This document shows positions 1 to 16,633 of a DNA stretch of 16,633 bases, in pieces; position 1 is the stretch's first letter, and each line of letters begins with the position of its first letter. The stretch is from NCBI RefSeq assembly GCF_000143415.4, contig NW_003314302.1:1-16633 (forward strand), given 5' to 3'. The translations under genes were made by a program, and so were the position numbers. This stretch comes from Selaginella moellendorffii. Lineage: Eukaryota; Plantae; Lycopodiophyta. Under the pieces are notes generated by a model, which was given only the letters and a program-made list of their open reading frames with translations, was not told where the DNA came from and did no database searches.

Positions 1-3
1 TAC

Positions 4-951
4 CATATAGTTTCTTCCACAGTTTCCATGAAGGAGTCACGGGTCAATTTACCTGCAAAGGGAAAGAAATCATCTCAAAGCTGCCGAAAAGAAGATTCTT
101 ACCATAAACAATTATGGGCTGGACACCTGGGTCTTTGATGAAAACTACTGCCGGTGCCAACTCTAATCCAAGCCTGCTTCACACGCAAAAGCATGAATCA
201 ATTCACGTGATTATCACTAAAACTACCGGCTTTTCCAAATCGAGCCTCCCTCTTGCCTCCACAAAACACATCCGAAAGACGTCAACTCGGAGTACTTCTT
301 GGCCGCTTCTCTTACAAATGGAAGTGCATGCTCTCCTGTGTCAGAAAAAAGAATAACTTTCACCTAAAAAGAAGTGCAAAAGAGAGAGATTTTGATTAGC
401 ATCGTAGGATTTTGTTTATGTTACTATACCAGCACCTTATGCGGTCCAGATTTTTGAATGAACTTGGGTATCTGTGTGACTTTAGTCAGTACTTGTTTTA
501 GAATTTAGTGAAAATTGTGGCTACCAAGTTCTGGAAGAATAATAACGAATGCGAGGAAGATCGAGAAGCAGCATTGCTGTCCCAGTCCAGTATAGAATCG
601 TAGCTGAGGCCTTTGGAGTACCTACAGTGTTCGTCAGGAAAAGCGGAACAAGGCTTCATGAATTTACCGAATCAGGCATTTTAATTTCCTACACCCCAGT
701 GGCTTGGCAACAAGAGATGGAATCCCTGAAGAAAAAAATGAAAGAAAATGAAAGAAAATAGGAGGTTTACGTGTTTACCATGGCGTCTGATCCACCTCTT
801 TCCTGCCAAGAGCTTTGCGAGTTGAACTTCTCCTAGTTCGACTCTCAAAAGATTAACTTGGCCTTCGAGAACTTCCGCTGGAACCACGAACAGCATGGCT
901 GGAAAAAACACGAACATGCAAAGCATTACCCAGCCTTTCCCACACTGGTGA
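4..951 (-). pseudogene. 5'-truncated DNAJC16-like (Arabidopsis At1g18700-like DnaJ/thioredoxin-fold) gene fragment, no J-domain; runs off the left edge
   Basis: Phase-consistent GT-AG exons ~951-930, 877-779, 725-668, 621-525, 471-436, 363-227, 173-103, 52-4. Translation: SPVWERL/AEVLEGQVNLLRVELGEVQLAKLLA..GIPSLVAKPLGCRKLKCLIR..IPKFIQKSGPHK/VKVILFSDTGEHALPFVREAAKKY..VLWRQE..APAVVFIKDPGVQPIIVYG. This matches the recalled plant DNAJC16-like sequence (LELGDVQL..GLPSI..DCLIR..KVKVILFSKTGERA..APAIVIMKDPG). Confidence 0.8.
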
Positions 952-1011
952 GATCACAAACTTGGAAACGCAAATGAATTCGCGAGTTTAAAACCAGCAC
1001 AATGTATGTAC

Positions 1012-1589
1012 CTGTGTCCAGAATATAAACGTCGTTTAGATAGGCATTACCAGCATCCTCGCCACCCATGACAACGAAACAGTTCTTATAAAAAGAGCAG
1101 GTATGGCTATCCTGAGGAATAGGCGAGACTCCAGTGGTAGAAATCTTCTTCCAGACAAAAGTATCTACAGGAAAAAAAAAGTTTAGAAGAAAACAAGGAA
1201 AGATAACAGGATATTACTCGTGTTCAAAACATGGAGGTCATTGTAGTACTACTCCTCTGAGGGATCGCTGGATTTCCCACATCCCCCAAACACAAACAGG
1301 TTGTCACCGATGAGAGACGCGCTATGTCCTTCTCTCAGAGCAGGAACATCACCAAAAACGTCAGGTTTCCCCCAGGTGTTGGTAGCTGCATCAGGTGATA
1401 AGAACAAGAAAAAAACAATCGATAGAACTCGGAGCTTACCAGTATCCAAAACAAAGAGATCGTTGAGCGGGCTGGTTCCATCGGTACCACCAAACACATA
1501 GAGCTTAGACTTGACGGCCGTTGAGCTGTGGCTGTCTCGAGGAGAAGGGTGCGTTCCTTTCATCACAGGCTTGCTCCAGGTGTACGTCC
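1012..1589 (-). pseudogene. Kelch-repeat beta-propeller gene fragment (At1g18610/At1g74150-like) with an in-frame stop, truncated at both ends
   Basis: Exons 1589-1440, 1385-1218, 1164-1012 (introns 54 and 53 bp). Kelch motifs PRDSHS..LYVFGG, REGHSA..LFVFGG, QDSHT..VVMGGED..YLNDVYILDT. TAG at 1249-1251 interrupts SEE*YYNDLHVL. Confidence 0.9.
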
Positions 1590-1797
1590 CTGCGCAATCC
1601 CACCAGAAGAGTGAAGAACCGATGACAACGTGAATCCCCTCGTAATCCAATCTGCAAAGCATACATAAGCAAAGCATTCCCTCCCAGTCGATGGAGCGGT
1701 TGCAAATCTAGAATTGAAACAGTGCCTCCCATATTGCCATCTTGGCCGTCTATATCAATCTTCACAGATTTGGATAGTCGGATTAATCATACTCCCT

Positions 1798-1887
1798 TAT
1801 TTAAACGTGCTATTGGCATATGGCATCCGGCGTCTTTTATTCCATTTTTAGAATATTATTTCTGAATATGCTTATAATCTAACGGTT
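1798..1887 (-). promoter_or_regulatory. Possible core promoter: TATA-like TTTAAATA, CCAAT and an MSA-like MYB3R site
   Basis: On the - strand, TTTAAATA at 1798-1805 and CCAAT at 1812-1816. On the + strand, TCTAACGGTT at 1878-1887 fits the YCYAACGGYY MSA consensus. These motifs are short and could occur by chance. Confidence 0.25.
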
Positions 1888-2014
1888 GAAATTGAAAAAA
1901 TTCAAATAGATGGAATAGATCAAAGTGCCAAGGGGTGGCAACTCTTCAAATTTGAATTTGATGACCCTCCAAATCAAGTGAAACTTTTAGGGAGATCGAG
2001 CAGATTGTGAGCTG

Positions 2015-2018
<4 letters not shown>

Positions 2019-2108
<90 letters not shown>
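2019..2108. repeat. (CT)45 / (GA)45 microsatellite, followed by a degenerate (GTGTCT)n tail to ~2132
   Basis: Perfect dinucleotide run directly visible in the sequence. Confidence 0.99.
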
Positions 2109-2112
<4 letters not shown>

Positions 2113-2172
2113 CTGTGTGTCTGTGTGTCTCTGTGGTGGTGAACGCAGCAGCGGGAGTGTGCATACCCTTTG

Positions 2173-3118
2173 CAAAAGGCTGGATCGTTGATTGTTCATC
2201 GCCATTCACAACACACGCACAGGTCAATGGCGGACAGTCTGAAGAATACGATCTCCAGCTCTGTGACAACTTCCCCACTGGTTGATGCTCCCGGATTTCT
2301 CACCCTGTCACGGATTTCTCCCGGATTTCTCTTGATCTCTGATGCTAACGTGGTTTCTGTTGCACAGGAGCGAGTAACAGAGGGCTGTTTGGGAGTTCAA
2401 GAATTTTTTTTCTTTTGCTCGTGTCCAGAAAACCAACGACTTTTGGGGTAAACACTCTAAAGCCGTGTATCTAAACTCTCGGGATGCTATTAGAAAGATT
2501 CATGAGCGCATGTTTAGTCTGATGACTTCTCCAGTTTTCTTGCTTGTTTGAAATGCAGATTCAAATTAGTGGCGAGAAACTGAATCCACCATTTTCAGCC
2601 TGTCAAATCTCTTGGTTTTGGTGGCAGAAACAAAAGGCTGGATCGTTGATTGTTCATCGCCATTCGCGACACATGCACAGGTCAATGGCGGACAGTCTGA
2701 AGAACACGATCTCCAGCACTGTGACGAGTTCCCCACTGGCTGATGCTCCCGGATTTCTCACGCTGCCACGCCAAGTGCTTGCAACACGATTCCCAGCGTG
2801 CAAATGGCTGAACTCTCATTTCTCTTGATCTCTGAGGCTAACTTGGTTTTTGTTGCGCAGGAGCGAGTAACAGAGGGCTGTTTGGGAGTTCAAGATTTTG
2901 TTTCTTTTATTCGTGTCCAGACAACCAATGGCCTTTGGGCTAAACACTCTAAAGTCGTTTATCTAAACTCTCGGGATGCTATTAGAAAGGTTCATAAGCC
3001 TATGTTTAGTCTGATAACTTCTCCAGTTTTCTTGTTTGTTTGAAATGCAGATTCAAACTAGTGGCGCGAAACTGACTCCACCATTTTCAGCCTGTCAAAT
3101 CTCTTGATTTTGGTGACA
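2173..3118 (+). repeat. Diverged tandem duplication, period 458 bp (copy 1 2173-2630, copy 2 2631-~3118)
   Basis: Both copies begin CAAAAGGCTGGATCGTTGATTGTTCATCGCCATTC and end ..CCACCATTTTCAGCCTGTCAAATCTCTTG(G/A)TTTTGGTG, with scattered substitutions. Copy 1 lacks the segment at ~2771-2818 of copy 2 and has a local CGGATTTCTC duplication instead. Confidence 0.95.
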
Positions 3119-3546
3119 CAGGAAGGCAAGTTTTTTCATAGTCGTTTCTTAATTATGGGATTAAAAAGCCTTTTTGTGATGCAAGTGTACAATCCCTCCT
3201 GTTCGCCATGTTGTGTGTGCCATACAAACTTGTCAAAGGAAAAATATTTATACCCAGTCAATGGTCATGTCATTGTTTGATACGACTTTGGAAGATCAAG
3301 AAACTGCAAATTTTATGGTACGTTTTCTCTTTCTTGTGTTGTTCTTGTTGACGATTTCTTTAGGTCAGAGATATGCTGGAGGTTTGGAGGTGACAGTGTT
3401 GTCAAGACATGATGCAGCTGCAGACCTGGTTCAGATGTATGCATATTCTCAGTGCTTCTTTACATGTGCATATTTTACTGCCTCTTATTATGTACAACAA
3501 GGACTACGTGCTTGGGCAGCTCATATATGATCAAGCAACGAAGAGA

Positions 3547-3621
3547 CTGCCTGGTGCTCCTGGATCTCTCATCCTGTCGCGCCAAGGGCTTGCAACAAGA
3601 TTCCCAGCGTGCATATGGCTC
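3547..3621 (+). repeat. Third, partial and more diverged copy of the duplicated unit (homologous to 2736-2810)
   Basis: CTGCCTGGTGCTCCTGGATCTCTCATCCTGTCGCGCCAAGGGCTTGCAACAAGATTCCCAGCGTGCATATGGCTC aligns without gaps to 2736-2810. Confidence 0.85.
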
Positions 3622-4174
3622 GAGGTGGTAAAGCTGACTCACCCTTGTTTTACCTGTAGTGCCGTTTTTGTTTTGTTGTGTGGATCAACTGCTAAGGCGT
3701 TCTTAAGGTGTCAGAGGATGATTATTCAGTGAGTGTGAGACAGATGAGCAAGAAAAACGGAAGCGCCTTCACAAGCATTGGATCCAAGAGCAGACACACC
3801 AAAAAAAATATTCTCTGGCATTTACATTATCTGGAGATGAGGTCAGACACACACCTACAGCTTACCCCTGCATTTGCAAAAGCCCCATTGGAAATGGCGA
3901 CAAGAAATGTGTCAAATAGCACAAGAGAATGATACAGCTAACTTCCAAAACAATCATTCATTCATATGTAGGCCTTTGATGTTTTGAAAAAATGAGAGAT
4001 GAAAACAAGAATAGAAAGAAGTTTTGAAAAGCTATGTCTTTAAAGCTTCCACTCCTTTTAAAGAAATACACACTCAAATATATCAAAACATTCTCCCAAT
4101 TTTACAAAACACTTCAAAAACTAAACTGCCACCTTTTGCAAGCATTATATATGAAAAAAGATCCTTGTTACAAC

Positions 4175-4545
4175 CACCAAACTCCTGTGCCGTCTGCAAA
4201 GCAGTGCTTAGATCTCAGTACATTCGACAAGCTACCAGCAGACTCTCTCACTCCTCTTGCCCAGCATCCCCTTGGAATCCTTAAGCTTCCCGGCCCTTGC
4301 AAACACATGCTGCTGAAGCGATCTGCAGTGAGATTCAAGCCATTGCTGCAGACTCCAAGAACTGCCACACGTTCACGAAAGCGATCTCCTCCTATTTCAA
4401 GGCCATGGCATGGAAGAGCTCTAGAGCTTCCCGTCCTTGTCTAGAGAGCAAAGCCCATCACCATGGAGTTTCACATCATTTACATGGGCCTCTTGTACTT
4501 TGCCTGCTCAAGCTTGCCATCGTGCCATCATAGAGAGCCATGATA
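4175..4545 (-). pseudogene. Heavily decayed PLS-class pentatricopeptide repeat (PPR) gene remnant including the E-domain start
   Basis: Blocks in shifting frames but in canonical order: GKLEQAK (4518-4498), NSMVMGFAL (from 4470), QGREALELFHAMAL, VFARAGKLKDSKGML, SLLVACRMY*DL. Multiple stops, frameshifts and deletions. Confidence 0.75.
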
Positions 4546-5069
4546 TTGAGTTTCTCCCTGGCCATCTTGCCAAAAGGGATTCACCCTCTGTAATCTTTTA
4601 ACCCGGGCTATCATATCGGTATGTCTCTGTAATTTTTTATCCCCAAGTCCAATGATTCTGCCCCAAATGAAAAACTGAATGACAGAAAAAGCTGTGGTAA
4701 AACTCTTTACTGTCAAAGGCTTTTCGAGAGTGTACCTAAACAGACACGTAGGCTAAGAAAAACTGTTTCAAATCATAGAAAAAAGGACTGCACAATTAGG
4801 TTGCTTTCGCATTTGTCAAGAGGTAATTTTGTTTCTATGTTTTCTGAGCTTTGTTTTTCCCGGCTTTGTAATGTTGTTCTGCTCCAAAATATAGGGACCC
4901 CAAGCATCATATTAAGGAGCTGTGCTTCTGCCAGCACTTTGTTTCAGTGTGCTTCTATTTTCTTGTGGTTTGGCTATTAGTCTATTTACTTATTTTCACC
5001 ATCTAGAGCCTGCACACGCTGTCTAAGCTTCTATTTTCTAAAAGAGATTGTAAAATCTCCTACAGATCA

Positions 5070-8000
5070 ATGGGTGGCAAAAGAAAGAGGAAAACATGTG
5101 ATCTAATTTTACATGAAGGCTGTATAATAAAAAAAAGTTCAACAACTTTGAATTCATCTCTATATATGAATAGAAGCATGGATGTAAGTGTGAGAAACCT
5201 GGTATCCTTTGAAGAACCCCCAACAATTCCAAGATTGATACCCATAGAAAAGACTTTTAGAAACACTGTTGAAATTATTACCCTACCTGTTAATGAAGTA
5301 AATCTTGGAAATGGAATTGAAAGCATGGAAAACACTAAACATTTAGGACTCTTGCAAAACAACATAGACGGTAAATGTAAAGTAGATTATATTGGACTCA
5401 TGGACAAACATTGTGACTATTGTAAAGCTTTTCTTTTTGCTTCAGAAACACAATCACAATGCTGTCATGGTGGACGTGTGTCTATAGAAAAACAAATTGA
5501 GTTCCCTGAACTGATTCGTAAATTATTAGATGGAACAGACCAACGAGGAAAATTCAAAGAATTAATTCGAAATTATAACAGTGCTTTGGCATTTGCATCT
5601 ATGGGGGCAAATATTGATGAAATGATTGGCAATGGACCATATTATTTTAAAATTCATGGACAAGTATACCATTCAATTGGCAGTTTCCGTCCTAAGCAAG
5701 GTCATGATGCAAAATATTCTCAACTTTATATTTTAGACACACTAGAAGCTACAGAAACAAGAATGAAAAGTAAATATAACAGTAAATGTGATACAACACT
5801 AATGAATGAATTAGATGCTTTATTACGAGAAATTAATCCATATGCAAAGGCATTTAAAATGCTAAAAGATGTGGAAGATGAGCTTCATATGACAAGTTCA
5901 AATATAAATAATGGACTACATAATATTGTAATGTATATAAAAGGTGAAAATACAATAGATCCAAGAAGATATAATGCACCAAATTCAAATGAAGTTGCTG
6001 CAGTGTTTACAAACCCTACTGGGGAGCCTCCGTTTAACCGTAGTATTGCAATACATCCGAAAGGTGAAAGTATGCAAGAGATATCAATTGTGACATCATG
6101 TTGTGATCCTATGGTATATCCACTGCTTTTTCCAAATGGAAATGAAGGCTGGTCACCAAATTTAAAATACACAGACAAGGGTTTGTCTTTAAAAAGAACT
6201 AAGATAACAATGATGGAGTATTATCGCTACAAGTTTGCTATTCGTGGTTTGATAAGAGATAGTTTTAAGATTATTGAATTCAATTCAGTTTTAATGGGTG
6301 GAAAATTATCCCAACAATACATGGTTGACATGTACACTAAAGTAGAGGGTGGTCGTCTCGATTGGATAAAAAACCATCAACGAGAATTAAGAGCTGAAGC
6401 ATACGGAGGTCTTTCTGATTTTGTTATAAACAGAGCAGAACAACAAGGGATACGTGCTGGAAAACTTGTGATTTTGCCATCAGGATTTATCGGTGGACCG
6501 AGAAATATGAATCAAAATTATCAAGACGCTATGAGTTTAGTAAGAAAATATGGAAAACCTGATTTATTTATTACGATGACGTGTAACCCAAAATGGCAAG
6601 AGATAACTGAGAATTTATTACCAGGACAAAGTTCTTCAGACAGACCAGATTTGGTAGCACGTGTTTTCCATGCTAAAAAACAAAAACTTATAGATGACAT
6701 ATACAAAGAAGAAATATTTGGAAAAGTTAATGCATATGTGTATGTAATTGAGTACCAAAAACGAGGACTACCACATTGTCATCTACTTGTAATTCTTAAA
6801 AATGAGAATAAAATCAAAACTGTAGATGATGTAGACAACATTGTTAGTGCAGAAATACCAGACCCAAACAGTGATCCTGAATTGTATGAACTTGTGAAAA
6901 AACATATGATACATGGTCCATGTGGTCCTGGATTTCCTGAAAGTCCATGTTACAAAAAAGGTGAATGTAAATCTCGATATCCACGAGATTACTGTGAAGA
7001 GACAAAAAATATCAGTGGCCAATTCCCAGAGTATAAAAGACGTTATGATAGTCATAAAATCTACATTAAAAATAATGAAATTGACAATAGGTTTGTTGTT
7101 CCTTATAGTAAGTATCTTTTGCGTAAATATAAAACTCATATTAATGTAGAGGTTTGCTCAACTGTGAAAAGTGTGAAATATATTTTTAAATATATATATA
7201 AAGGCCATGATTGTGCAGAGATACATTTTCACAAAGAAGGAAACATAGAGAACGAGAATATTCTTGATTGGAATGAAATAAATGCATTCAGAAATTGCCG
7301 TTATGTATCAGCTGCTGAAGGAATGTGGAGGTTATTTGGATATGATTTACATGGAAGATCACATTCAATTGAAAGATTAGATGTGCACTTACCAAATTTG
7401 CAAAGTGTTTACTTCAATGAGGGTGAAGAAGAAATTGCATTAGAGAAAGGTCATAGAACAAAACTTACTGAATGGTTTGAATTGAATAAAAGAGATGAAT
7501 TTGCAAGAACATTGACATATCCAGAAATTCCGGAATGGTATATTTGGAATGCAAAAACTAAAACATGGGTAAAAAGACAACGAGGTTGGAAAGTTATAGG
7601 TAGAATGTACACTGTACCACCGAAAGATAGTGAACGATTTTATATGCGATTATTATTGTTGTATAATAAAGGTGCAACAAGTTTTAAACATTTACGTAAT
7701 TGGAAAAACATACAATATGATAGCTATCGAGAAGTTGCACAAACGATGGGATTATTACAGGATGACCAAGAATGGGATAGATGTCTGGAGGAGTCTCTCA
7801 CATTTCAAATGCCTTCTAAAATTAGATATTTATTTGGAATAATGTGTCTCTTTTGTGAGGTTAATGATCCTAAGAAATTATGGAATAAATACAAAGTAGA
7901 TATGTGTGAGGATTTAATACGTAAATACAATGATGAGGATGTAGCATATGCACATGCACTTCAAGAGTTGTCTCTTTTACTAGAACAACATGGGAAATGC

Positions 8001-9509
8001 CTTTCAGATTATGATATTACTATACCATGTACTACATATCTAGAAAATAATAAAGAAAGAACCAATATATATGAGGATGAAATGTTTGAATACCAAGATA
8101 TTGAAAGAAACAAATTGTTACTGAATAAAGATCAACAATATGTCTTTGACAAAGTATGTAAAGCATTGGATGATAAAAATGAACCACAAATATTTTTTAT
8201 CGATGGTGTAGGAGGAACAGGAAAATCATTTCTATTCAATACATTAATAACACATTCACGAGCACTTGGAAGAAAGACTTTGTCTGTAACATGGACAGGA
8301 ATTGCAAGCACACTATTAATTGGTGGTCGCACAGTACATTCTACATTTAAACTACCTGTACCAGTCACTGAAACATGTACATCTGATTTAAGGGAAAATT
8401 CAAAGGAGGCTGATGAAATTAGAAAAACAGACTTACTAATTTGGGACGAAATAAGTATGGTTCCAATACATGCATTTAATGCTGTAGAACGTGTAATACG
8501 TGACATTAAAGGTTGTTCTGATAAATTTGGTGGTATAACTGTTGTAACTGGTGGTGATTTTAGACAAACACTACCTGTGCTTAAAAGAGCACGACGGGTT
8601 CAAATTGTACAAAATAGTGTTAAGTCAAGTTTTATATGGCCCTTTGTAGTGAAATATACACTTACAGAAAATATGCGTGTTAACAAAGATGAAAAGGAGT
8701 GGTCAGAGTGGTTAATTAAACTTGGAAATGGTAATTTACCAAGACTTGATGGATATGAAGATGATATAGTAGAACTACCAAAAAAATGTACAACCAAGAA
8801 TTCCATGATAGATGTTGTATTTGGTCAAAAAGTGTTACCTTCTATAAGTAACTCACAAAAAGCAATCTTAACTACATTGAATGATCATTCGTTAGATATA
8901 AATGAACAAGTTCTAACAAGGATGTCAGGAAGACTGTTTTCTTTTAAAAGTGTGGATACAATTGATAGTGATTCCTTTGAAGAAATACTGGACTACCCAG
9001 TAGAATATCTAAATTCCATAACACCATCTGGGATGCCTCCGCATAACTTAAATATAAAAATTGGAAGTATTGTGATGCTTCTACGAAATCTTGATGTAAA
9101 AAAAGGTTTATGTAATGGTACTAAGTTAATGATTACATCAGCGTTACAAAATGTAATAGAAGCAAAAATATTACATGGAGATAGAGAAGGAAAAAAAGTC
9201 TTACTACCAAGAATCATACTAAAACCTACAGATGGTGACATGCCATTTGTATTAAAAAGACGACAATTTCCTTTGAGACTTGCATTCTCAATTACAATAT
9301 GCAAATCACAGGGCCAAACTTTAAATAATGTTGGAATCTTCTTACCACGTCCTGTTTTTGGACATGGGCAATTGTATGTTGCACTATCACGATGTACCTC
9401 TAAAGACCGAATAGTTATATGCGTAGAGGAATGTAAGAACCAAGGTAAACTTAAAAAGAGACCACAAATTACATACACAAAGAATATAGTCTACAAGGAA
9501 ATTTTATAG
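5070..9509 (+). CDS. RepHel: Helitron Rep/helicase transposase (HUH Y2 endonuclease + PIF1-like SF1B helicase), 1479 aa, intronless and intact
   Basis: N-terminal KRKRK and a Zn-finger-like CDYC..QCCHGG. Rep motifs DLFITMTCNPKW (~6561), EYQKRGLPHCH (HUH, 6774-6782), KYIFKYIYKG (~7176). Helicase motifs GVGGTGKS (8205), WDEISM (~8442), GGDFRQTLPV, LTENMR, KSQGQT, HGQLYVALSR. Confidence 0.98.
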   Translation: MGGKRKRKTCDLILHEGCIIKKSSTTLNSSLYMNRSMDVSVRNLVSFEEPPTIPRLIPIEKTFRNTVEIITLPVNEVNLGNGIESMENTKHLGLLQNNIDGKCKVDYIGLMDKHCDYCKAFLFASETQSQCCHGGRVSIEKQIEFPELIRKLLDGTDQRGKFKELIRNYNSALAFASMGANIDEMIGNGPYYFKIHGQVYHSIGSFRPKQGHDAKYSQLYILDTLEATETRMKSKYNSKCDTTLMNELDALLREINPYAKAFKMLKDVEDELHMTSSNINNGLHNIVMYIKGENTIDPRRYNAPNSNEVAAVFTNPTGEPPFNRSIAIHPKGESMQEISIVTSCCDPMVYPLLFPNGNEGWSPNLKYTDKGLSLKRTKITMMEYYRYKFAIRGLIRDSFKIIEFNSVLMGGKLSQQYMVDMYTKVEGGRLDWIKNHQRELRAEAYGGLSDFVINRAEQQGIRAGKLVILPSGFIGGPRNMNQNYQDAMSLVRKYGKPDLFITMTCNPKWQEITENLLPGQSSSDRPDLVARVFHAKKQKLIDDIYKEEIFGKVNAYVYVIEYQKRGLPHCHLLVILKNENKIKTVDDVDNIVSAEIPDPNSDPELYELVKKHMIHGPCGPGFPESPCYKKGECKSRYPRDYCEETKNISGQFPEYKRRYDSHKIYIKNNEIDNRFVVPYSKYLLRKYKTHINVEVCSTVKSVKYIFKYIYKGHDCAEIHFHKEGNIENENILDWNEINAFRNCRYVSAAEGMWRLFGYDLHGRSHSIERLDVHLPNLQSVYFNEGEEEIALEKGHRTKLTEWFELNKRDEFARTLTYPEIPEWYIWNAKTKTWVKRQRGWKVIGRMYTVPPKDSERFYMRLLLLYNKGATSFKHLRNWKNIQYDSYREVAQTMGLLQDDQEWDRCLEESLTFQMPSKIRYLFGIMCLFCEVNDPKKLWNKYKVDMCEDLIRKYNDEDVAYAHALQELSLLLEQHGKCLSDYDITIPCTTYLENNKERTNIYEDEMFEYQDIERNKLLLNKDQQYVFDKVCKALDDKNEPQIFFIDGVGGTGKSFLFNTLITHSRALGRKTLSVTWTGIASTLLIGGRTVHSTFKLPVPVTETCTSDLRENSKEADEIRKTDLLIWDEISMVPIHAFNAVERVIRDIKGCSDKFGGITVVTGGDFRQTLPVLKRARRVQIVQNSVKSSFIWPFVVKYTLTENMRVNKDEKEWSEWLIKLGNGNLPRLDGYEDDIVELPKKCTTKNSMIDVVFGQKVLPSISNSQKAILTTLNDHSLDINEQVLTRMSGRLFSFKSVDTIDSDSFEEILDYPVEYLNSITPSGMPPHNLNIKIGSIVMLLRNLDVKKGLCNGTKLMITSALQNVIEAKILHGDREGKKVLLPRIILKPTDGDMPFVLKRRQFPLRLAFSITICKSQGQTLNNVGIFLPRPVFGHGQLYVALSRCTSKDRIVICVEECKNQGKLKKRPQITYTKNIVYKEIL

Positions 9510-10801
9510 ATTTTCAACTCTAAACAACAAATTATTAAATGTGAACTTAAAAATTCTAAATTAAAATTTATCAAAAAAACTTACTTTTCTGTCTACAAAT
9601 TCAAACATATTAGTGATACACATACACAAATGCATTTATCCTAGAATAGTGATTCACACATAAGTGAAACTAAAATAAATAATTTATTAAATAAAGAGAT
9701 AACTTGGAATGGTTGCCAAAAAAAAAAAAAAGGTGACTCCTAAAATAAAAAAACAAATGTATAATATTTAATCACAAAGAAATGTAATTGTCTAGAGAGG
9801 CTAGAAATAACACCTTAGAATTCCCATGCTGTTATGTTGAGGCAGTGTGTGATAGCCAAATCTGGCCACAAACAAATTTGGTTCTGCCATTTTTTGTAGA
9901 AACCATGCTTCATCGAAATCTATTGTTTGAACTAAAGGTTTCCTTTCTGTATTGACTGTCTTGAAAATCATGGGTATAAGGATATTAACGACTTTGTAAC
10001 TGTAAATTTGCTTGATTTCGAGCACCCTTATCTCTATCTTCCTTAAAAGCTATTCCAGCAGAGTTGCCCAAAAAATGGTCACCAAAGGAGAAACTGAAAA
10101 AAACAATTTGCCTCCTAGAAACCATATTTGCACTACTCACATGGTTGATAGTTGTCTGGGCAAATCCACATGCTACAGATTTATTTGTTGTGACAGGAAT
10201 TACTAACAGCTCAAATTGGGTGGTTTGCCATAGGAGCCAATGTCCAATCACTACAGTCTATTGCAAGGTAAAGGTTACTCACCATCAAATCAAGGTGTTG
10301 GACAGGTAACAATCAAATGCCACAGACAAAACTCCAGAAAAATGTGACACAGTTGGGAAGAAATGTCAAATAGATGTAGTAGTTGGTAAATCGTCCCCAA
10401 GAAAAAGCCAGAACATAAAATGAATTAGTTGCCAAAGCCAATAAGCATGGTTTGATGACTTTGGTGATTACATGATACTTGCAAATTTTTAGTTACGAAT
10501 TCCAAGTTTTTGAAACTTCCTTCAAAGCATCTTTCTCTTGGACTCCATGCTGATCTTGAAATTTCAGAACAGCTTTTTAAAAAAAAAAATATTCACATCG
10601 CTTGAATGAATTACAAATCTTATATGACTTTGCGTAATTTTGGAATCCACAGAGCAAGCAATCCTCGTATCTCGTGCAAACAGAGCTGCCAAAAGGACAT
10701 TTATGGGCCTTCTTTTCCATTTTAGGTCAAAAAGAGACAATACTAAATGGGAGAGGAGTATCAAAGCGAATATAATATTATGAGACGATAATGTAACTGC
10801 T

Positions 10802-12210
10802 TTAAAACATATAATCCAAAAAAGATACATCCAGGGATTTAGTCAAAGTTTCTGATTCCGACTTGCATGCAACCCACACAGTGCATAGTGGAACTTCCAA
10901 TGTAAATTTTTTAGTCATGACACCATATGTTCTTCCATCATAGCAATACTCCTGTACACTAATTTATCATCTATATAATACCAAGTAAAGATTCTTACCT
11001 CTTGAGAACCAAACCATATGCTAAATTTGTGCAAAAGAGTATCATTGACATTACTTTTTGACTTGTGTGATGCACAAAGGTATATGTTGTTGTACAGTGA
11101 GAGGTATTCTGAATCTATGCATATAAATGCTACATATGTAAACTCATCACTGGCAAAGGATGACAACTCCGGTATTGGTACACAACCATGCTAAAGGACA
11201 TAGACACAATGAATTAACAAAGAACAAACTGGTAAAGCCTTACATGATACAGACTATTTGCTGCCAAACCACCTTGAAATATAGCTTTAATGGGGTTTTG
11301 AATTAAACAAGATTTTCCAGTATGCAGATTAGATGAAAGCTTTGCAAGCCAGCAAATGAGTGACATCTCACCACGAACAGATATAGGTGTACACAGCATA
11401 ACTTCAGAATTGAGTCTGAAATCTTTTGAAGTTATGAAAATATCACCTGTTCAACCAATTACTAATGAGACTTCTTTAACGTTCAGTCTACATTACCTGA
11501 ATGAACATTTATAAAGTAAATTTTCGAAGCATCCAATGAGCAACCAAATGATACCAAGTTAGCAGGGAAACAAGGCACAGATAATCTCAAGTCTATGGTG
11601 AACGAGCAAATCTCTCGGAGTGAAAGTAATTTCGAGCATACAAATGTATTGCAGGTCCAATAAGTACCAATAAAACCTCTGTATTCTTGATGCTGTAAAC
11701 CACTGATGATACAATTTTCAGGCTGACCGTCCATAGAAAGCAGTAGACATCTTAAAGAATTTGGAAAGTTGACATTCAAAATTGCCTCCGCTTCATTTAT
11801 GACGTTATTTGGTAAACCTTTGGTTGACATGTACTCAAAACCTTTAAATCTGAGGAAGCTTTGTATTTTAAGGCACAGCTTTCTGGTTACAGAGGTAATA
11901 TTATAATTGTAGCGTTTGAACACATTGAACCAACTCTTGTAAGTTTCCTGTAGCAAAATTTGACATTTTTTTAAAGCAAATCAGTGAAAATACAAACCTT
12001 GTACGTTCTGCAGCGTCTACCTTCGTAATCTGTACACATGTAGACAGAAAAATCCTGTTCACAATGCAATTGCCAAATTCTATCACTTTGAAATTCCATG
12101 TAAAATTCTTTAGCTATACATGAAAACACTGCGCTACAATAGCCATTGCTTTCTGCAATTCTGAAAACTACATCTCTGGGTAGATTGGGGGGAACAAAGC
12201 TCTTTTCCAT
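10802..12210 (-). CDS. SKIP16: Divergent SKIP16-like F-box protein (F-box + SMI1/KNR4-like + degenerate ApaG/DUF525), 5 exons, 402 aa
   Basis: Exons 12210-11998, 11947-11497, 11446-11244, 11190-10999, 10951-10802 total 1209 nt with no stops. GT-AG introns of 50, 50, 53 and 47 bp. F-box LPRDVVFRI..SCIAKEF..SDRIWQLHCEQDF; SMI1-like INEAEAILNVNFPNSLRCLLLSMDGQ..GFIGTY..LLSLREI; VPIPELS; C-terminus LDYMF* (recalled SKIP16 end: PDYIF*). A homologue, probably not the orthologue. Confidence 0.85.
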
Positions 12211-12243
12211 GTGAAACTGGTAGTTAGGTTTAGGTCAAATAGA

Positions 12244-12641
12244 ATGAATTTTTCATTCATTCTTCGTCCTTTCCACTTCTGCAAAGGCGTTTGGTTGACG
12301 GTATGTATGCGTGTTGTATTTTATATTTTGTAGAAAAAATATTTGAAAACCACTAGCAGTTTCCAAACGAATTGACAAGAAAAACTATGGAAGACTGTTT
12401 CCACTGCAACAATCAAAACATTATCTGTGTGTTCGATGAAACATCTGAATTCATGTTCAAACTGTGCTCTGGTACAAACAACGACAACATATTTGAGACC
12501 GATACAAACTGGCAGATATTCTTAAAGAATCATGGAAGTGAAATCGGAGACATATGCACTATAAACATAGATAAAGATGGAGATCTCACTGCTTCAGTGC
12601 AAAAAATTGATAAAGACCCTGGAAGCAGAACACCACTGTAG
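12244..12641 (+). CDS. Single B3 DNA-binding-domain protein (REM/VRN1-like), 2 exons, ~112-113 aa
   Basis: Exon 12244-12300 (MNFSFILRPFHFCKGVWLT), intron GTATGT..TAGCAG (12301-12356/12359), exon 12357/12360-12641 (FPNELTRKTMEDCF..IICVFDETSEF..NWQIFLKNHGSEIGDICTINIDKDGDLTASVQK). Fits the B3 pattern F..L.P.H....L..P..and W..F...H....GD.C. Confidence 0.7.
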
Positions 12642-12828
12642 ATTCATAGGAAAAAAGAAAGAAGTGTTGCTTCATGCTTATGTTTTTTATAAGATAAAAA
12701 AGGTAAATGAAGGAACAGCCCATGTGATATGTATATAACAGCTCTGAAAAAATGAGTGGAGCTATGAGCAACAAAATGTATAGTGCCGCTGTGAACCACA
12801 TTGTGCCAATCTGGACCCATTTTGAAAG

Positions 12829-13173
12829 CTAGCCAACGTTAATAGCATCCCGGTCCAGTGAGCAACATAGCCAAGTAGATACTTGCAAAAGATAAAAGAA
12901 TGAGGAGATGTACGTGACAAGACGGTGCTGGGACGGCTTCTTTACTTCGTTGAAGTCGTGCTCAGATCCAGTGCTGCTTAGTTTGTTGCTGTTTTTGAAA
13001 TCTCTCCTTGAGAGCAAAGGTTGCAAAGGAGCTTCTGGAAGAAGAATTGAGTAGAAAAATCACAACCTTGCTCTAATGTTACCTTCCTTGCGATGAGGAG
13101 CTGGCAGAGACAGGAAAGTGGTCAAAGACTCTGAAGAATATATCACGGAGATAAGTGTGGTGGCCATTCCCAT
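12829..13173 (-). CDS. Possible small spliced gene or gene fragment of unknown function (~98 aa)
   Basis: ATG 13173, exon to 13083, 48-bp GT-AG intron with a polypyrimidine tract (13082-13035), then in frame with ORF 13026-12829. No recognised domain. Confidence 0.3.
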
Positions 13174-14031
13174 GACTCCGATTCAATTGTAGTCTCACGG
13201 CTCGCTTGACAATGCGCTGTAGCATAATTACATGCAATAGAGCGCTATCACCGAAGCAGGGAGGGGTAATACCACCAAATAGTGGTGATGAGATGTTTTT
13301 TAAAACCTTAGTTTACGTTTAATTATTTTTTACCCTTAGTTTACGTCTAAATATGTTAATGTTAACATCATGTTCCTTATAGCAAGTATATGTGGAATTA
13401 ATCATCCTATAAACAAGCATATATTTATATTTAATAAATATATATACCTATTTATAGCATGAAAGATCATGAAGAACATTGAGGTTGGGAACACAAAAGG
13501 CCAAATAAAATTTGATTGAGCAAAAAGTGTTAGGTGTGACGAATATAGATTCAAATATTAAATAATTAACATAAAATATTTATTAATTAATATGTACAAA
13601 ACATGTACTACTATATTAATTAAGAACTGAGCTAGCAGAAACCTAAAAACTGCTATGCCACAACAGGCAAACATCTACATCTTTTTATTGTAACAAAGCT
13701 CACTACTCTCACCAGAGCTTGCAAGAAATCTACTACGAATACTAGCCTTTTAAGAACAATATGTCATTACAGAAACATTGGTATATAAGAATCTGCTATA
13801 TACCAGAACCACCATATTCCGATCAAAGAATGTAAAGCATCCAAACAAGACCATTCATCTGTAAAAAAAAATTGCAAAGCTTCAATCATGTTGATGATAA
13901 CTTTACGAATTTAGACAACGTCCAAAACTTAAACATACACTGTCCAAACTGTAACGTATGCAGCAGATGACGTGTCATAAGTAAAAAAAATGAAAAGACA
14001 TGTACTTACATATCTAGGTCATAGCGGCAAC

Positions 14032-14806
14032 ATGAGTGAAGCACAAGAGATACAAATGGGGGAAGATGAAAAATGGGAAGAAGCACTGAAAAATTTGAAT
14101 GACAAGGCAAAAGAACGAAAATGGAATCGTGACACAAAAATAAACCAAAGGTGTGATATTATACTTTGATGTATGATTCATATTGTTCTCTTTCCTGTAG
14201 GTTCTATCCTAATGATAAACAGGTTAGATACCTAAACGTCATGGGATGCGCACCAGAAGATTATATTTATGGTTTTGACAGAAGACAAGGCTGTTCTAGG
14301 CTCATAGATGAATATGAAAGAAAAATTCGACGTTTCCGCAAGTTCCATAGAAATGAAGATGTCGCTTCAGGTAATTATTGAACATTAACATTTATTGAAT
14401 TCCGAAACTGGCAACTAACTTCACAGGCCTGGCGGTTGTCATAGCTGAAAAATTAAGCAGCAAAAGAGTTAGAAAAAGAAATGAGCTTCCAAAGAAAAAT
14501 GAGATCCAGAGGATCTATACAACAAAAACCAACGGTATAATGCAGTACACCTTCACCACACTGCACTATGGTTTTGGAGTCCCCATTAAGACTTGTTGCC
14601 GCATGAATCGAAACATGTCGGAAAAGCTCCTAGAGAGACTAACGGATTTACATCAGAAAATAAATCCTAGAGAATGGCATCCAATTCGACTAGAAGGAAT
14701 AGCGATGCAAATTGATCCAAATCATGCTGAAGTAATTTTCGACTACAATCCGTTTAAAGATGCCATGGAACTCTTAGAAATAGCTTTAAAAGGAAAGCTG
14801 ATGTAA
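14032..14806 (+). CDS. Orphan 3-exon gene, 222 aa, basic NLS-like patch, no recognised domain
   Basis: Exons 14032-14150, 14201-14370, 14427-14806 (669 nt, open). GT-AG introns of 50 and 56 bp, the second with a CTAAC branch point. Joins ORF-track pieces 14166-14381 and 14540-14806 in phase. Confidence 0.75.
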
Positions 14807-14910
14807 AAGCATAATTCTGAAGTCAAAATCACTTTATTGAGACAATGGATAGAAACCATGATCTTTGTTCAAATAACTACAGACTCAAAAAATTCCATGT
14901 CCATGTCCAT

Positions 14911-15692
14911 GTGTATGTCGTAGAACTGGCCCTTAGACATAAACAGGTAACTAGAGAAGTTTGAGAACTTCTTGGCATTGTAGAAGTTGGTCCATTAGCA
15001 AGCCGACAACATTACGTAAGCAATAAGGATGTAACCCATGATGACGTTTGCGATGATGAAGAATAGAGGACAAGAGGATTTCCGTCCAGATCCCAGCCGA
15101 GGCCAAGCTTCTGGAAGCCCAACCTGAGACACTGTGCCAGGACCGAGTTGGAGAAGGCCCAGCAAACCCAGGGATGGAGGAGAGAATGCTGAGGAAGTAG
15201 CACGGGAGTGCGTAGTACGCAAAGACAAAGGAGAGGAAGAACTAGATCCTTGACAGGTCCTTAACACTTAGCTTGTCATGCAAAGTCCTGTCGAACACGC
15301 AAGATAGTATTCACGCGAGATAGTAGCTCCACCAGATTCTTTCGCAAAAGACCAGCCCATCCAAGTTGACTTCGATCAAAACACTTCAAAGGAAAGCAAG
15401 CAAGAAAAGCTTGTTTTCTTACCTGAGTGGTGATCACCAGCAAGAGCCCATGTAGAAATGGAACTTCATCCTGTAGAAAGTTATGGTAAGTCGATGATGA
15501 AGACCGCGTAAACACCACCATTCCCAGCTGCGTAGCCAACATTGGTGAAGATGGTGATGAAGACGCTCCTTCTTGATGAAGAGTCCTGGATTGAGTGAAA
15601 AACCCTGAGCCCGTGTAGTAGACCCTGGTGGGCAATAGTGCAGCCATGAAGCGGCCAATTGGCAACGCTGCAATCTGGGCCGATGTATACAA
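14911..15692 (-). pseudogene. OPT: Internal fragment of an oligopeptide transporter (OPT family, OPT4-like) with frameshifts and stops
   Basis: Ordered blocks across frames: SAQIAALPIGRFMAALLP, FSLNPGLFIKKE, VFITIFTNVGYAAGNGGVYAV, LLLVITTQ|intron|GWAGLLRKNLVE, RTLHDK..LSRI*FF..FAYYALP, WVCWAFSNSVLAQ, IANVIMGYILIAYVM..*WTNFYNAKKFSNFSSYLFMSKGQFYDI. Confidence 0.9.
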
Positions 15693-16007
15693 TGCTCACC
15701 CATAAAATACAAAATTCAGCCAAAGTATACATTTAGTTCGGGCCAAAGTATTGACCATATACCTCATTAAAGTGTATCTCAGCCGTAAAATACAATATCC
15801 TTCCTTTCATCCGAGTGATCCACCTAGACAACAACTGCCGAACTCATTTGTTGATCGTCTAATGAATTGCCATCTCTAGATACCTTTCACATTTGTCCAA
15901 ATATTTTTAATTTTAAAAGAGGGATTTATTTTTAGGTCAGGTAACCATAAAGAGATGGAAAGAGACACTCTTGGTTTGTACACACATTTCCAAAGTTATT
16001 TTTAAAG

Positions 16008-16590
16008 TGCTTGGACCTTCAAAGGCACCAAGAAGAGCAATCGAAAGAGGCTTAAAGACACATTGACCACAATTCCTCCGATAAATGATGTTGACGAAGG
16101 TATTTTCTTTATTAGTTTGTCTGAATTTCCAGGGATTGCATTGAAGAATGCACAGCTGAGGTTCAAAGAAGAAAACACAAAGCACCTATTAGAGTTGCTC
16201 TACCAAATGAACCATGTGAGATGGAAATTGAGAATATGCAAGGAAAAGGTAGAACAATATTACACTTGTTCTTCATTTTTCATTTTTTTGTTTTCCTAAA
16301 AGTTTTTAAATTCCTACAGACCAATCTGAATCAAAAAAGGCAGATACTACCATCATCAATGAAGGTTACAAAGCAAAAAAAATTGACTTTACTATTTTTT
16401 CTAAACACTTGCAATCTTTCTTTTTTCAATGTTACAGAACCATGTCAGGAAGACACCAGCATTGTTAATGAAGGTACAAATTGCAAAAAAAAAGTTATTT
16501 TAAAGTCCATCCAAACATTTTTCTTACTTTCTATGTTTTTTTAATGACAATTAGATTGTCTGAAATCAAGAGCATTAGCTACTGATGGAG
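16008..16590 (+). CDS. Partial multi-exon gene of unknown function with symmetric phase-1 micro-exons; continues past the window, 5' end unresolved
   Basis: Exons 16008-16099, 16156-16248, 16320-16364, 16438-16473, 16555-16590 splice in frame (AWTFKGTKKSNRKRLKD../AEVQRRKHK..NEPCEME../DQSESKKADTTIINE/EPCQEDTSIVNE/DCLKSRALATDG). Introns are GT-AG. Confidence 0.55.
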
Positions 16591-16633
16591 GTATGCTATG
16601 TTTTAGCTAAGAATAATTAAATGTAAAATATGT

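What the first reader, a model, noticed from the sequence alone, without database searches (positions are those of the whole stretch)
5070..14806. Candidate Helitron accessory-gene system: intact RepHel next to intact F-box, B3 and orphan genes
Seen: two classes of non-RepHel genes. (a) AT-rich, tightly packed, fully spliceable, stop-free but highly diverged genes (SKIP16-like, B3, 222-aa orphan). (b) GC-richer, broken host-like fragments (Kelch, DNAJC16-like, PPR, OPT). Established: plant Helitrons usually carry dead gene fragments and sometimes an RPA70-like gene; some TEs and viruses encode counter-defence proteins (VANDAL VANC anti-silencing proteins, polerovirus P0 F-box, and Clink, the F-box protein of rolling-circle nanoviruses). 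Inference: class (a) genes are long-term residents under element-level selection and may form a host-manipulation kit of an SCF substrate adaptor, a sequence-specific DNA binder and an unknown nuclear protein.
Basis: partly seen in the sequence, partly recalled or inferred. Interest (0 to 1): 0.85.

Follow-up and report, generated by a model that had tools for sequence, protein, structure and literature searches.

The report
Giant Helitron with conserved three-gene cargo
A very large rolling-circle transposon (Helitron) of the spikemoss Selaginella moellendorffii carries, besides its intact transposase, three whole genes (an F-box/SUKH protein, a small B3-like protein and an orphan). A second, anciently diverged Helitron lineage keeps the same trio, so they are long-maintained transposon cargo rather than dead host scraps, but what they do is still unknown.

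Summary
The core observation holds. ORF 5070-9509 is an intact 1479-aa RepHel. Downstream lie three stop-free genes with 47-59-bp GT..AG introns: an F-box+SUKH protein (402 aa, minus strand), a B3-like protein (112 aa) and an orphan (222-236 aa). The host is Selaginella moellendorffii.

The genes lie inside a canonical Helitron. Its 5' end (A|TCATACTCCC) is at 1787, and three copies have three different upstream flanks there. No 3' hairpin+CTAG occurs in the window. Two other copies stay homologous for at least 8 kb past the window end, through a MORC-like gene to an RPA70-like gene.

A second lineage (L006/L007) holds the same trio in the same order and orientation at 38-57% amino-acid identity. 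Synonymous sites are saturated (pS 0.71-0.78) and pN is 0.35-0.41, which indicates long-term purifying selection. Recent copies decay, as RepHel itself does.

Not supported: SKIP16 membership (no ApaG domain, no sequence hit), most class (b) labels, any expression (no RNA evidence), and the counter-defence role, which remains inference. A related RepHel+RPA element (L010) lacks the trio.

HELIANO (2024) already lists B3 and F-box-associated domains as stable Helitron cargo. First-stage notes report a similar cassette on other pieces of this genome.

The parts
1..1786 (.). Left flank, outside the element. It is other Helitron-derived repeat DNA with a Kelch gene fragment (929-1707, minus strand).
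   Evidence: Pfam Kelch hits at 2e-26 and 6e-12. Positions 963-1805 are 92-93% identical to L006 3678-5229. Not homologous to L004 or L005.
1787..1810 (+). 5' terminus of the family-1 Helitron: A|TCATACTCCCTTATTTAAACG.
   Evidence: Homology among the window, L004 and L005 starts exactly here, with three different upstream sequences. Sister elements show the same 5' motif directly after a hairpin+CTAG 3' end.
1787..16633 (+). Body of a giant autonomous Helitron. Its 3' end lies beyond the window, and the total length is at least about 23 kb.
   Evidence: L005 matches 1783-13806 and L004 matches 8863-16633 at 95-97%. L004 and L005 remain 96-98% alike for at least 8 kb further. No hairpin+CTRR terminus on either strand of the window.
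3180..3527 (+). SDG2_C-like host gene fragment in the GC-richer 5' part of the element.
   Evidence: Pfam SDG2_C 7e-07, 29 bits against a cut-off of 27.
5070..9509 (+). Intact RepHel transposase gene: single exon, 1479 aa.
   Evidence: GC3 is 0.20.
10802..12210 (-). F-box + SUKH (SMI1/KNR4) protein gene with 5 exons, 402 aa. The C-terminal roughly 180 aa have no recognisable domain.
   Evidence: Gene model. SMI1_KNR4 scores 1.7e-4 here and 2.6e-6 (28.5 bits, above the 25.4 cut-off) in the family-2 copy. The exon-1 profile hits the GID2 F-box best, at E about 0.03. No ApaG.
12244..12641 (+). Small B3-like protein gene with 2 exons, 112 aa. It lies head-to-head with the F-box gene, with the start codons 33 bp apart.
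   Evidence: Gene model. Pfam B3 scores 20.0 bits here and 16.3 bits in family 2, both below the cut-off of 30.1. Atlas feature neighbours are B3 clusters at 0.94. The fold search was inconclusive.
12743..13260 (.). Nested, separately repeated sequence between the B3-like and orphan genes.
   Evidence: Contig word depth is about 9,000-11,000 against about 700-2,400 around it, with loose ends at both borders. Present in L005 and mostly absent from L004.
13990..14806 (+). Orphan gene with 3 exons: 236 aa from the ATG at 13990, or 222 aa from the ATG at 14032.
   Evidence: Gene model. 98% identical to SELMODRAFT_403004. The family-2 homologue is 41-45% identical. No Pfam, Atlas or PDB match.
15670..16633 (+). 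Probable start of a further conserved cargo gene, annotated as a 501-aa product at the homologous place in L004. The start coordinate is approximate.
   Evidence: L004 gene 11618-13976 lies in the stretch aligned to window 13175-16633. A family-2 homologue is in L006 18043-20019. A C-terminal CxxC...CxxC piece is conserved.

Best explanation
The window holds the first roughly 15 kb of a giant (at least 23 kb) canonical Helitron of Selaginella moellendorffii.

Shown:
- The 5' end is A|TC at 1787 and the RepHel at 5070-9509 is intact.
- Between RepHel and downstream MORC-like and RPA70-like genes (both beyond the window) sits a three-gene module. It comprises an F-box+SUKH protein, a small B3-like protein transcribed divergently from it, and an orphan protein.
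- The module is part of the mobile unit and is old. A second Helitron lineage in the same genome keeps the same three genes in the same order and orientation, with synonymous sites saturated and proteins 38-57% identical.
- It has therefore been under purifying selection while carried by Helitrons. Individual inserted copies then decay neutrally, as RepHel does.

Inferred, not shown:
- The F-box+SUKH protein docks onto the host SCF ubiquitin ligase and marks a bound protein for degradation.
- The B3-like protein binds DNA, possibly the element's own sequences.
- Together with the orphan they help the element replicate or escape host control when it is active.
- At present the copies appear to be transcriptionally silent.
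For: - Host and extra copies: (S. moellendorffii scaffolds GL377565, GL377600, GL377802 and GL377896).
- Continuous homology at 95-97% across RepHel, the module and beyond.
- A precise shared 5' terminus with three different flanks. The family termini were learned from CTAG|TC junctions. No 3' terminus anywhere in the window.
- Copy state: all three genes are intact in the window; two are intact and one has a single stop in L004; all are degraded in L005, whose RepHel is also dead.
- Family 2 has the same trio, the same head-to-head arrangement and conserved intron positions. Between families pS is 0.71-0.78 and pN 0.35-0.41.
- In L006 the trio is followed, on the same strand, by RepHel-2 fragments and a hairpin+CTAG end.
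- phmmer of the SUKH exon against 1.84 billion representatives finds only two clusters, both from these Helitron loci.
- DNA contigs of the species cover 9000-14950 in 180 pieces of three identity classes, at similar depth over RepHel and the module.
- GC3 of the module (0.34-0.43) lies between RepHel (0.20) and host ORFs (about 0.36-0.68).
Against: - The 3' terminus of this copy was not reached, so 'internal' rests on homology among copies and on analogy with L008 and L010.
- L010 carries a RepHel 92% identical in DNA to the L006 fragment, plus an RPA-like gene and a 3' end, yet lacks the trio. Linkage to RepHel is therefore not obligatory, and the module may move between elements.
- Between young copies dN/dS is 0.5-1.2 for the F-box gene, on very small counts.
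- There is no transcription evidence. Two raw RNA runs gave 0 reads (no positive control) and about 20 RNA contig sets held a 0.00 share of words.
- Domain calls are weak: B3 is below threshold and the F-box has E about 0.03.
- Only five loci were examined. True copy number and the share of intact copies are unknown.
Confidence: 0.7

Rival explanations
1. Passive cargo. The trio is an ordinary host gene cluster picked up by 3' read-through and copied along with the element. The protein-level conservation was produced in a host locus, and each Helitron lineage captured it separately or exchanged it by recombination.
For: Helitrons capture host DNA routinely, and this element also holds SDG2_C, MORC-like and other fragments. 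L010 shows that closely related elements can lack the trio. No expression was detected. Young copies decay freely.
Against: No stand-alone host copy or orthologue was found among 1.84 billion representative proteins. The only two clusters are the Helitron-borne ones. Both diverged versions sit among RepHel, RPA-like genes and Helitron termini. Two independent captures of the same three genes in the same arrangement are unlikely. The genes are whole, with introns, unlike the shredded fragments.
Confidence: 0.17
2. Segmental duplication. The shared 12-23 kb blocks are duplicated or allelic chromosome segments that happen to include a Helitron, so the neighbours are not part of the transposon.
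For: The public assembly holds both haplotypes, and L004 and L005 share more than 20 kb. The 3' boundary was not seen.
Against: The left boundary falls exactly on a canonical Helitron 5' end in three copies with three unrelated upstream sequences. The copies differ by about 3% and by large internal deletions. DNA contigs show many variants at high depth.
Confidence: 0.08
3. Counter-defence kit in the strict sense proposed by the first reader. The F-box protein degrades a host silencing factor (as polerovirus P0 does) and the B3-like protein acts as a sequence-specific anti-silencer (as VANC does).
For: This rests only on analogy and on the long-term maintenance of the genes on a transposon. 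SUKH domains are known adaptor or immunity modules used by viruses (PMC3113570 abstract). A MORC-like gene, from a family of host silencing factors, lies in the same element.
Against: No target, no expression and no phenotype are known. The domain calls are weak. The trio is dispensable for a related RepHel-bearing element.
Confidence: 0.15

Closest known systems
Helitron-like elements with stably captured extra domains (HELIANO survey, PMC11417382)
   Same: [quoted passage not shown] The layout here is the same: RepHel, then cargo genes, then RPA-like.
   Different: Here the cargo is a linked three-gene module of whole, intron-bearing genes (F-box+SUKH, not FBA_3) conserved between two deeply diverged lineages in a lycophyte. 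I could not check whether Selaginella was in that survey, because no supplements are held.
Plant Helitron RPA-like gene (PHRPA; Mothra study, PMC4683698)
   Same: It is an accessory gene maintained on plant Helitrons downstream of RepHel. Semi-autonomous derivatives keep the accessory gene but lose RepHel, as L004 does here.
   Different: That study found PHRPA only in monocots and dicots. Here RPA-like genes (REPA_OB_2, Rep_fac-A_C) sit in Selaginella Helitrons, and the module in question is not RPA.
SKIP16 / FBXO3 (F-box + SUKH + ApaG proteins; SUKH superfamily, PMC3113570)
   Same: An N-terminal F-box-like motif is followed by a SMI1/KNR4 (SUKH) domain.
   Different: No ApaG domain was detected. 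phmmer finds no SKIP16 or FBXO3 protein. The protein may be a very diverged derivative or an independent fusion.
VANDAL VANC, polerovirus P0 and nanovirus Clink (counter-defence or host-manipulating proteins of transposons and viruses; from general knowledge)
   Same: They are encoded by a mobile element, and two of them use an F-box-like motif to hijack SCF.
   Different: There is no sequence relationship and no functional evidence here. The comparison is only a hypothesis about how the module might work.

Membership tests
Canonical Helitron (HLE1) | RepHel with HUH, two catalytic Tyr and a PIF1-type helicase | tested here: met
   Pfam hits. GLPHCHLL at 566, YIFKYIYK at 704 and GVGGTGKS at 1046.
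Canonical Helitron (HLE1) | 5' end TC, preceded by host A | tested here: met
   TTAA|TCATACTCCC at 1787 in the window and in L005. The boundary of homology in three copies falls here.
Canonical Helitron (HLE1) | 3' end with a GC-rich hairpin about 10 nt before CTRR, followed by host T | tested here: inconclusive
   Absent from the window and from the fetched parts of L004 and L005. Present in sister elements: L008 14250, L010 14095 and L006 5322 on the minus strand. The end of this copy lies beyond the DNA I could fetch.
Canonical Helitron (HLE1) | Copies at different genomic sites | tested here: met
   Window, L004 (GL377565) and L005 (GL377600) have different 5' flanks. Multi-variant DNA contigs also point to many copies.
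Stably captured Helitron cargo (HELIANO criterion) | Same gene at the same position in most copies of a family | tested here: met
   The F-box/SUKH and B3-like genes are at the same place in 3 of 3 family-1 loci, and the orphan in 2 of 3. The trio is in 2 of 3 family-2 loci and absent from L010. The sample is small.
SKIP16 / FBXO3 | F-box | tested here: inconclusive
   No Pfam hit on exon 1. A two-family profile hits three GID2 F-box chains best, at E 0.026-0.035 over the F-box region. The LPxxVxxRI...SCxxKxF...W pattern is conserved.
SKIP16 / FBXO3 | SUKH (SMI1/KNR4) domain | tested here: met
   Family-2 copy scores 28.5 bits (cut-off 25.4). The window copy scores 22.6 bits, E 1.7e-4.
SKIP16 / FBXO3 | C-terminal ApaG (DUF525) domain | tested here: not met
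   No Pfam hit at E<=1 on the C-terminal 150-170 aa of P0130 and P0131 or on single exons. The profile against PDB gave no hit at E<=10.
SKIP16 / FBXO3 | Detectable sequence relationship to SKIP16/FBXO3 proteins | tested here: not met
   phmmer of exon 2 against 1.84 billion representatives gave only two Selaginella Helitron-borne clusters.
B3 DNA-binding domain | Pfam B3 at or above the gathering score | tested here: not met
   20.0 bits (window) and 16.3 bits (L007) against a cut-off of 30.1. B3 is the top family in both.
B3 DNA-binding domain | B3 pseudobarrel fold | tested here: inconclusive
   The AF2 model has pLDDT 60. Foldseek gave no hit with E<0.09, and B3 structures appear only at ranks 9-30 with TM about 0.25-0.29. 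Atlas feature neighbours at 0.94 include B3 clusters.
Transposon- or virus-encoded counter-defence proteins (VANC, P0, Clink) | Expressed, and interferes with host silencing or the cell cycle | not testable with these tools
   The only data are negative for RNA: 0 reads in two runs without a positive control, and a 0.00 share of words in about 20 RNA contig sets.

The most novel reading that the evidence does not exclude
The F-box+SUKH, B3-like and orphan proteins form a Helitron-encoded host-manipulation system, possibly working with the MORC-like and RPA-like cargo of the same element. The F-box protein would recruit SCF to destroy a host restriction or silencing factor. The B3-like protein would recognise the element's own DNA. 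It would be a lycophyte counterpart of VANC or P0, carried by a rolling-circle transposon.
Probability: 0.15. Interest if true: 0.85.

Novelty: new variant of a known kind. Interest (0 to 1): 0.55.

Why it matters
Helitrons are known mainly for carrying dead gene fragments. Beyond RPA, OTU and the endonuclease, little is known about genes they keep for their own use.

A whole, intron-bearing three-gene module conserved across two anciently split Helitron lineages gives a concrete and testable candidate for transposon-encoded accessory functions in plants, involving ubiquitin-ligase hijacking and DNA binding.

It also shows that giant, gene-rich Helitrons with RPA-like genes exist in a lycophyte, earlier in plant evolution than a published analysis of Helitron RPA genes concluded.

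If the genes prove to be neutral hitchhikers, the case still documents how whole genes survive on a transposon for a very long time.

Tried and rejected
- Exact look-up of RepHel returned nothing on record.
- Three metagenomic loci with the nearest RepHel relatives (45-47% identical) have no homologue of the module, so they gave no cross-species support.
- I first suspected foreign origin from the roughly 50-bp introns and the animal-like RepHel hits. I dropped this once the host proved to be Selaginella, whose Helitron genes all show such introns. The RepHel tree shows a long separate branch, not a recent transfer.
- RNA evidence: two raw RNA runs gave 0 reads and the RNA contig sets held none of the sampled words. 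There was no positive control and no second read-laying run, so silence is suggested but not proven.
- The depth could not be turned into a copy number, because no single-copy baseline was laid.
- The AF2 models of the B3-like exon (pLDDT 60) and the orphan exon 3 (pLDDT 56) were too weak. I did not search with the orphan model.
- PDB profile searches for the B3-like protein, the orphan and the F-box protein's C-terminus gave nothing useful.
- I tried to reach the 3' end through RPA-like proteins. L008-L011 turned out to be other lineages, and the look-ups were then exhausted.
- Whole spliced proteins could not be submitted to the search or fold tools because there is no reference for joined exons. 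Exons and annotated partial models (P0129-P0132) were used instead.
Full report
**What is in the window.**
The window has an AT-rich block from about 5000 to 15000 (GC 0.28-0.39) between GC-richer flanks of 0.41-0.48. A single ORF at 5070-9509 encodes 1479 aa. Its Pfam hits are Helitron_like_N (5e-61), PIF1 (2e-58) and Pif1_2B (1e-18). It also has an HUH motif (GLPHCHLL, 566), a two-tyrosine motif (YIFKYIYK, 704) and a Walker A motif (1046).

**The three gene models.**
I rebuilt the three neighbouring genes.
- The F-box/SUKH gene lies on the minus strand and has five exons: 12210-11998, 11947-11497, 11446-11244, 11190-10999 and 10951-10802. It encodes 402 aa.
- The B3-like gene lies on the plus strand and has two exons: 12244-12300 and 12360-12641. 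It encodes 112 aa. Its ATG is 33 bp from the ATG of the first gene, head to head.
- The orphan lies on the plus strand and has three exons: 13990 or 14032 to 14150, 14201-14370 and 14427-14806. It encodes 236 or 222 aa.

All seven introns are 47-59 bp with GT..AG ends.

**Host and further copies.**
- The orphan's last exon is 98% identical to SELMODRAFT_403004 of Selaginella moellendorffii.
- The SUKH exon was searched with phmmer against 1.84 billion representative proteins. It found only two clusters, both hypothetical proteins of S. moellendorffii.
- Fetching the loci of these proteins gave two more copies of the same unit.
  - L004 (GL377565) matches window 8863-12777 and 13175-16633 at 95-97%.
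  - L005 (GL377600) matches window 1783-13806.
- L004 and L005 remain 96-98% identical to each other for at least 8 kb past the window's end. That stretch runs through a 501-aa gene, a 224-aa gene and a MORC-like gene (Morc6_S5 2e-9) to the start of an RPA70-like gene (REPA_OB_2).
- DNA contigs of the species laid on 9000-14950 gave 180 pieces in three identity classes. Word depth was similar over the RepHel 3' end (about 2100-2400) and the module (about 700-1800), with no step between 9509 and 10800.
- A separate high-copy repeat is nested at 12743-13260.

**Borders.**
- Homology among the window, L004 and L005 begins at exactly the same base, window 1787. The window and L005 read ...TTAA|TCATACTCCCTTATTTAAACG. 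In L004 another Helitron's end (hairpin CCCAGCGTAGCTGGG, 11 nt, ending in CTAG) abuts TACTCCC.
- L008 and L009 show the same hairpin+CTAG directly followed by TCATACTC or TACTC. This gives the termini used by these Selaginella Helitrons: canonical 5' TC and 3' hairpin+CTAG.
- A scan for such 3' ends found none on either strand of the window, nor in the fetched parts of L004 (3000-20775) and L005.
- In sister elements with both ends visible, the RPA-like gene lies 2-4 kb before the 3' end (L008 5352-14275; L010 3' end at 14095-14120). By analogy, everything between RepHel and the RPA-like gene is internal to the element.
- The 3' end of this copy itself was not reached.
- The Kelch fragment (929-1707) lies left of the 5' end, in DNA shared with another Helitron-rich locus (L006).

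**Selection among young copies.**
- The window copy has all four genes open.
- L004 has lost most of RepHel. Its F-box/SUKH and B3-like genes are open, with no indels even in their introns, and its orphan has one stop.
- L005 is dead. Its RepHel has at least 9 nonsense changes and a 5-bp insertion. The F-box gene has a 1-bp deletion and has lost its start. The B3-like gene carries deletions and the orphan is deleted.
- Window against L004 gives dN/dS of 0.61, 0.11 and 0.24 for the three genes. The pooled value is 0.35 (p = 0.003), from 15 synonymous and 21 nonsynonymous differences.
- Other pairs give 0.5-1.2 for the F-box gene. RepHel itself gives 0.53 between the window and L005.
- Young copies thus behave as transposon copies usually do, decaying after insertion, and they do not discriminate between the hypotheses.

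**Selection between families: the decisive evidence.**
- L006 (GL377802) and L007 (GL377896) carry a diverged version of the same trio. The F-box/SUKH gene lies head to head with the B3-like gene, with start codons about 30 bp apart, followed by the orphan on the B3 side.
- Amino-acid identities to the window are 39-57% by exon for the F-box/SUKH protein, 38% for the B3-like protein and 41-45% for the orphan.
- Synonymous sites are saturated (pS 0.71-0.78) while pN is 0.35-0.41. All compared pieces are open in at least one of the two copies.
- Introns 1, 3 and 4 of the F-box gene are at the same positions in both families. Intron 2 is absent in family 2.
- These loci also hold RepHel fragments 60-62% identical to the window's, RPA-like genes, and on the module's strand in L006 a hairpin+CTAG end shortly after the orphan and the RepHel fragments.
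- The trio has therefore been kept as coding sequence over a long time in Helitron company.

**A caveat on linkage.**
L010 carries a RepHel 62-65% identical to the window's, and 92% identical in DNA to the L006 fragment. It also has an RPA-like gene 90% identical to L006's and a proper 3' end, yet no trace of the trio. The module is not an obligatory part of these elements and may have been lost or exchanged.

**What the proteins are.**
- SUKH: the SMI1_KNR4 hit passes Pfam's cut-off in family 2 (28.5 bits against 25.4) and is just below it in the window copy (22.6 bits).
- F-box: Pfam does not call it. A profile of exon 1 from both families hits three F-box protein GID2 chains best (E about 0.03) over the F-box region, and the conserved pattern fits an F-box.
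- C-terminus of the F-box/SUKH protein: the last roughly 170 aa show no ApaG or any other domain. No SKIP16 or FBXO3 protein is found by sequence. The protein has the F-box+SUKH half of the SKIP16/FBXO3 architecture but is not demonstrably a member.
- B3-like protein: B3 is the top Pfam family in both families but below threshold (20.0 and 16.3 bits against 30.1). Language-model neighbours at 0.94 include B3 clusters. The AF2 model was weak (pLDDT 60) and the fold search inconclusive.
- Orphan: no match anywhere, and its model is a low-confidence helical one.
- Composition: GC3 is 0.20 for RepHel and 0.34-0.43 for the module. ORFs of neighbouring host genes range from 0.36 to 0.68, mostly above 0.5.

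**Expression.**
No read from two raw RNA-seq runs (about 12% of each was read) lay on 9000-14950. No positive control was possible. About 20 RNA contig sets of the species held none of the sampled words of the F-box/B3 pair. The copies look silent in the sampled material.

**Comparison with the literature.**
- The HELIANO survey reports 20 domains stably included in Helitron-like elements. They include RPA, B3 and the F-box-associated FBA_3, mostly in separate ORFs at conserved positions, with RPA downstream of RepHel in HLE1 (PMC11417382). The general idea is therefore known.
- New here are a linked module of three whole genes, its conservation across two deep lineages, and the lycophyte host.
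- The Mothra study concluded that Helitron RPA genes occur only in monocots and dicots (PMC4683698). The Selaginella RPA-like Helitron genes seen here extend that range, though I did not test their phylogenetic position.
- The SUKH superfamily, including FBXO3, SKIP16 and viral members, was defined in PMC3113570 (abstract only).
- First-stage notes of this scan describe a similar F-box/B3-like cassette, giant gene-rich Helitrons, a Helitron-borne MORC and CTAG|TAC junctions on other pieces of this genome. These are unchecked notes, consistent with what I saw.

**Verdict.**
The functional part, a host-manipulation kit, remains an inference with no direct evidence and no detected expression.

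Noticed in passing
L005 1-412; L006 14213-16511; L007 9595-10605; L010 10001-12186: RPA70-like genes (REPA_OB_2, Rep_fac-A_C) sit in several Selaginella Helitron lineages, 2-4 kb before the 3' end where that end is visible. A published analysis (PMC4683698) found Helitron RPA genes only in monocots and dicots.
   Followed up: partly
L004 2941-2990; L008 5323-5372; L009 5169-5215; L006 about 5297-5322 (minus strand): A Helitron 3' end (hairpin + CTAG) is joined directly to a Helitron 5' end (TCATACTC, or TACTC with the first bases missing). This indicates head-to-tail stacking or insertion into the 5' tip of another Helitron.
   Followed up: partly
window 4901-5072 vs L005 17041-17212: The 172 bp holding the RepHel start codon are inverted in place in L005. 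L005 also lacks 9 bp and 24 bp at the two borders; the 24 bp encode the basic N-terminal residues.
   Followed up: partly
window 12743-13260: A roughly 520-bp repeat with about ten-fold higher contig depth than its surroundings is nested between the B3-like and orphan genes. It is present in L005, and L004 has other sequence there.
   Followed up: partly
L004 16447-18436; L005 3481-5207: A MORC-like gene (HATPase_c_3 + Morc6_S5, annotated as 364-387 aa) is part of the same repeated unit, downstream of the window. MORC proteins are host transposon-silencing factors.
   Followed up: no
window about 15670-16633; L004 11618-13976; L006 17800-20019 (minus strand): A fourth cargo gene is conserved between the two Helitron families. 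It is annotated as 501 and 438 aa and has a C-terminal CxxC...CxxC piece but no Pfam hit. It starts inside the window, beyond the finding's range.
   Followed up: partly
window 5070-9509: The nearest RepHel relatives in the protein collection are only 45-47% identical and come from metagenomes and animals. Angiosperm RepHels are 37-38% identical and form a separate, well-supported clade. The Selaginella protein sits on its own long branch.
   Followed up: partly
window 2173-3118: Two copies of a roughly 490-bp tandem unit (91-93% alike) and a (GA)n tract at about 2010-2110 lie in the GC-richer 5' part of the element.
   Followed up: no
window 11447-11496 vs L006 10118-10804: Intron 2 of the F-box/SUKH gene is present in family 1 but absent in family 2, where exons 2 and 3 form one 229-aa ORF. 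This is an intron gain or loss within a transposon-borne gene.
   Followed up: partly
window 9000-14950 (run X4, organism B): A run labelled as a second organism holds low-depth pieces of the RepHel 3' end, the F-box gene's 3' exons, the B3-like gene and the orphan. They have few differences (about 1-3 per 200 bp), and some are joined to other sequence.
   Followed up: no
L007 2306-3640 (minus strand): An LTR-retrotransposon gag ORF (445 aa, zinc knuckle) abuts and truncates the family-2 orphan gene in L007.
   Followed up: no
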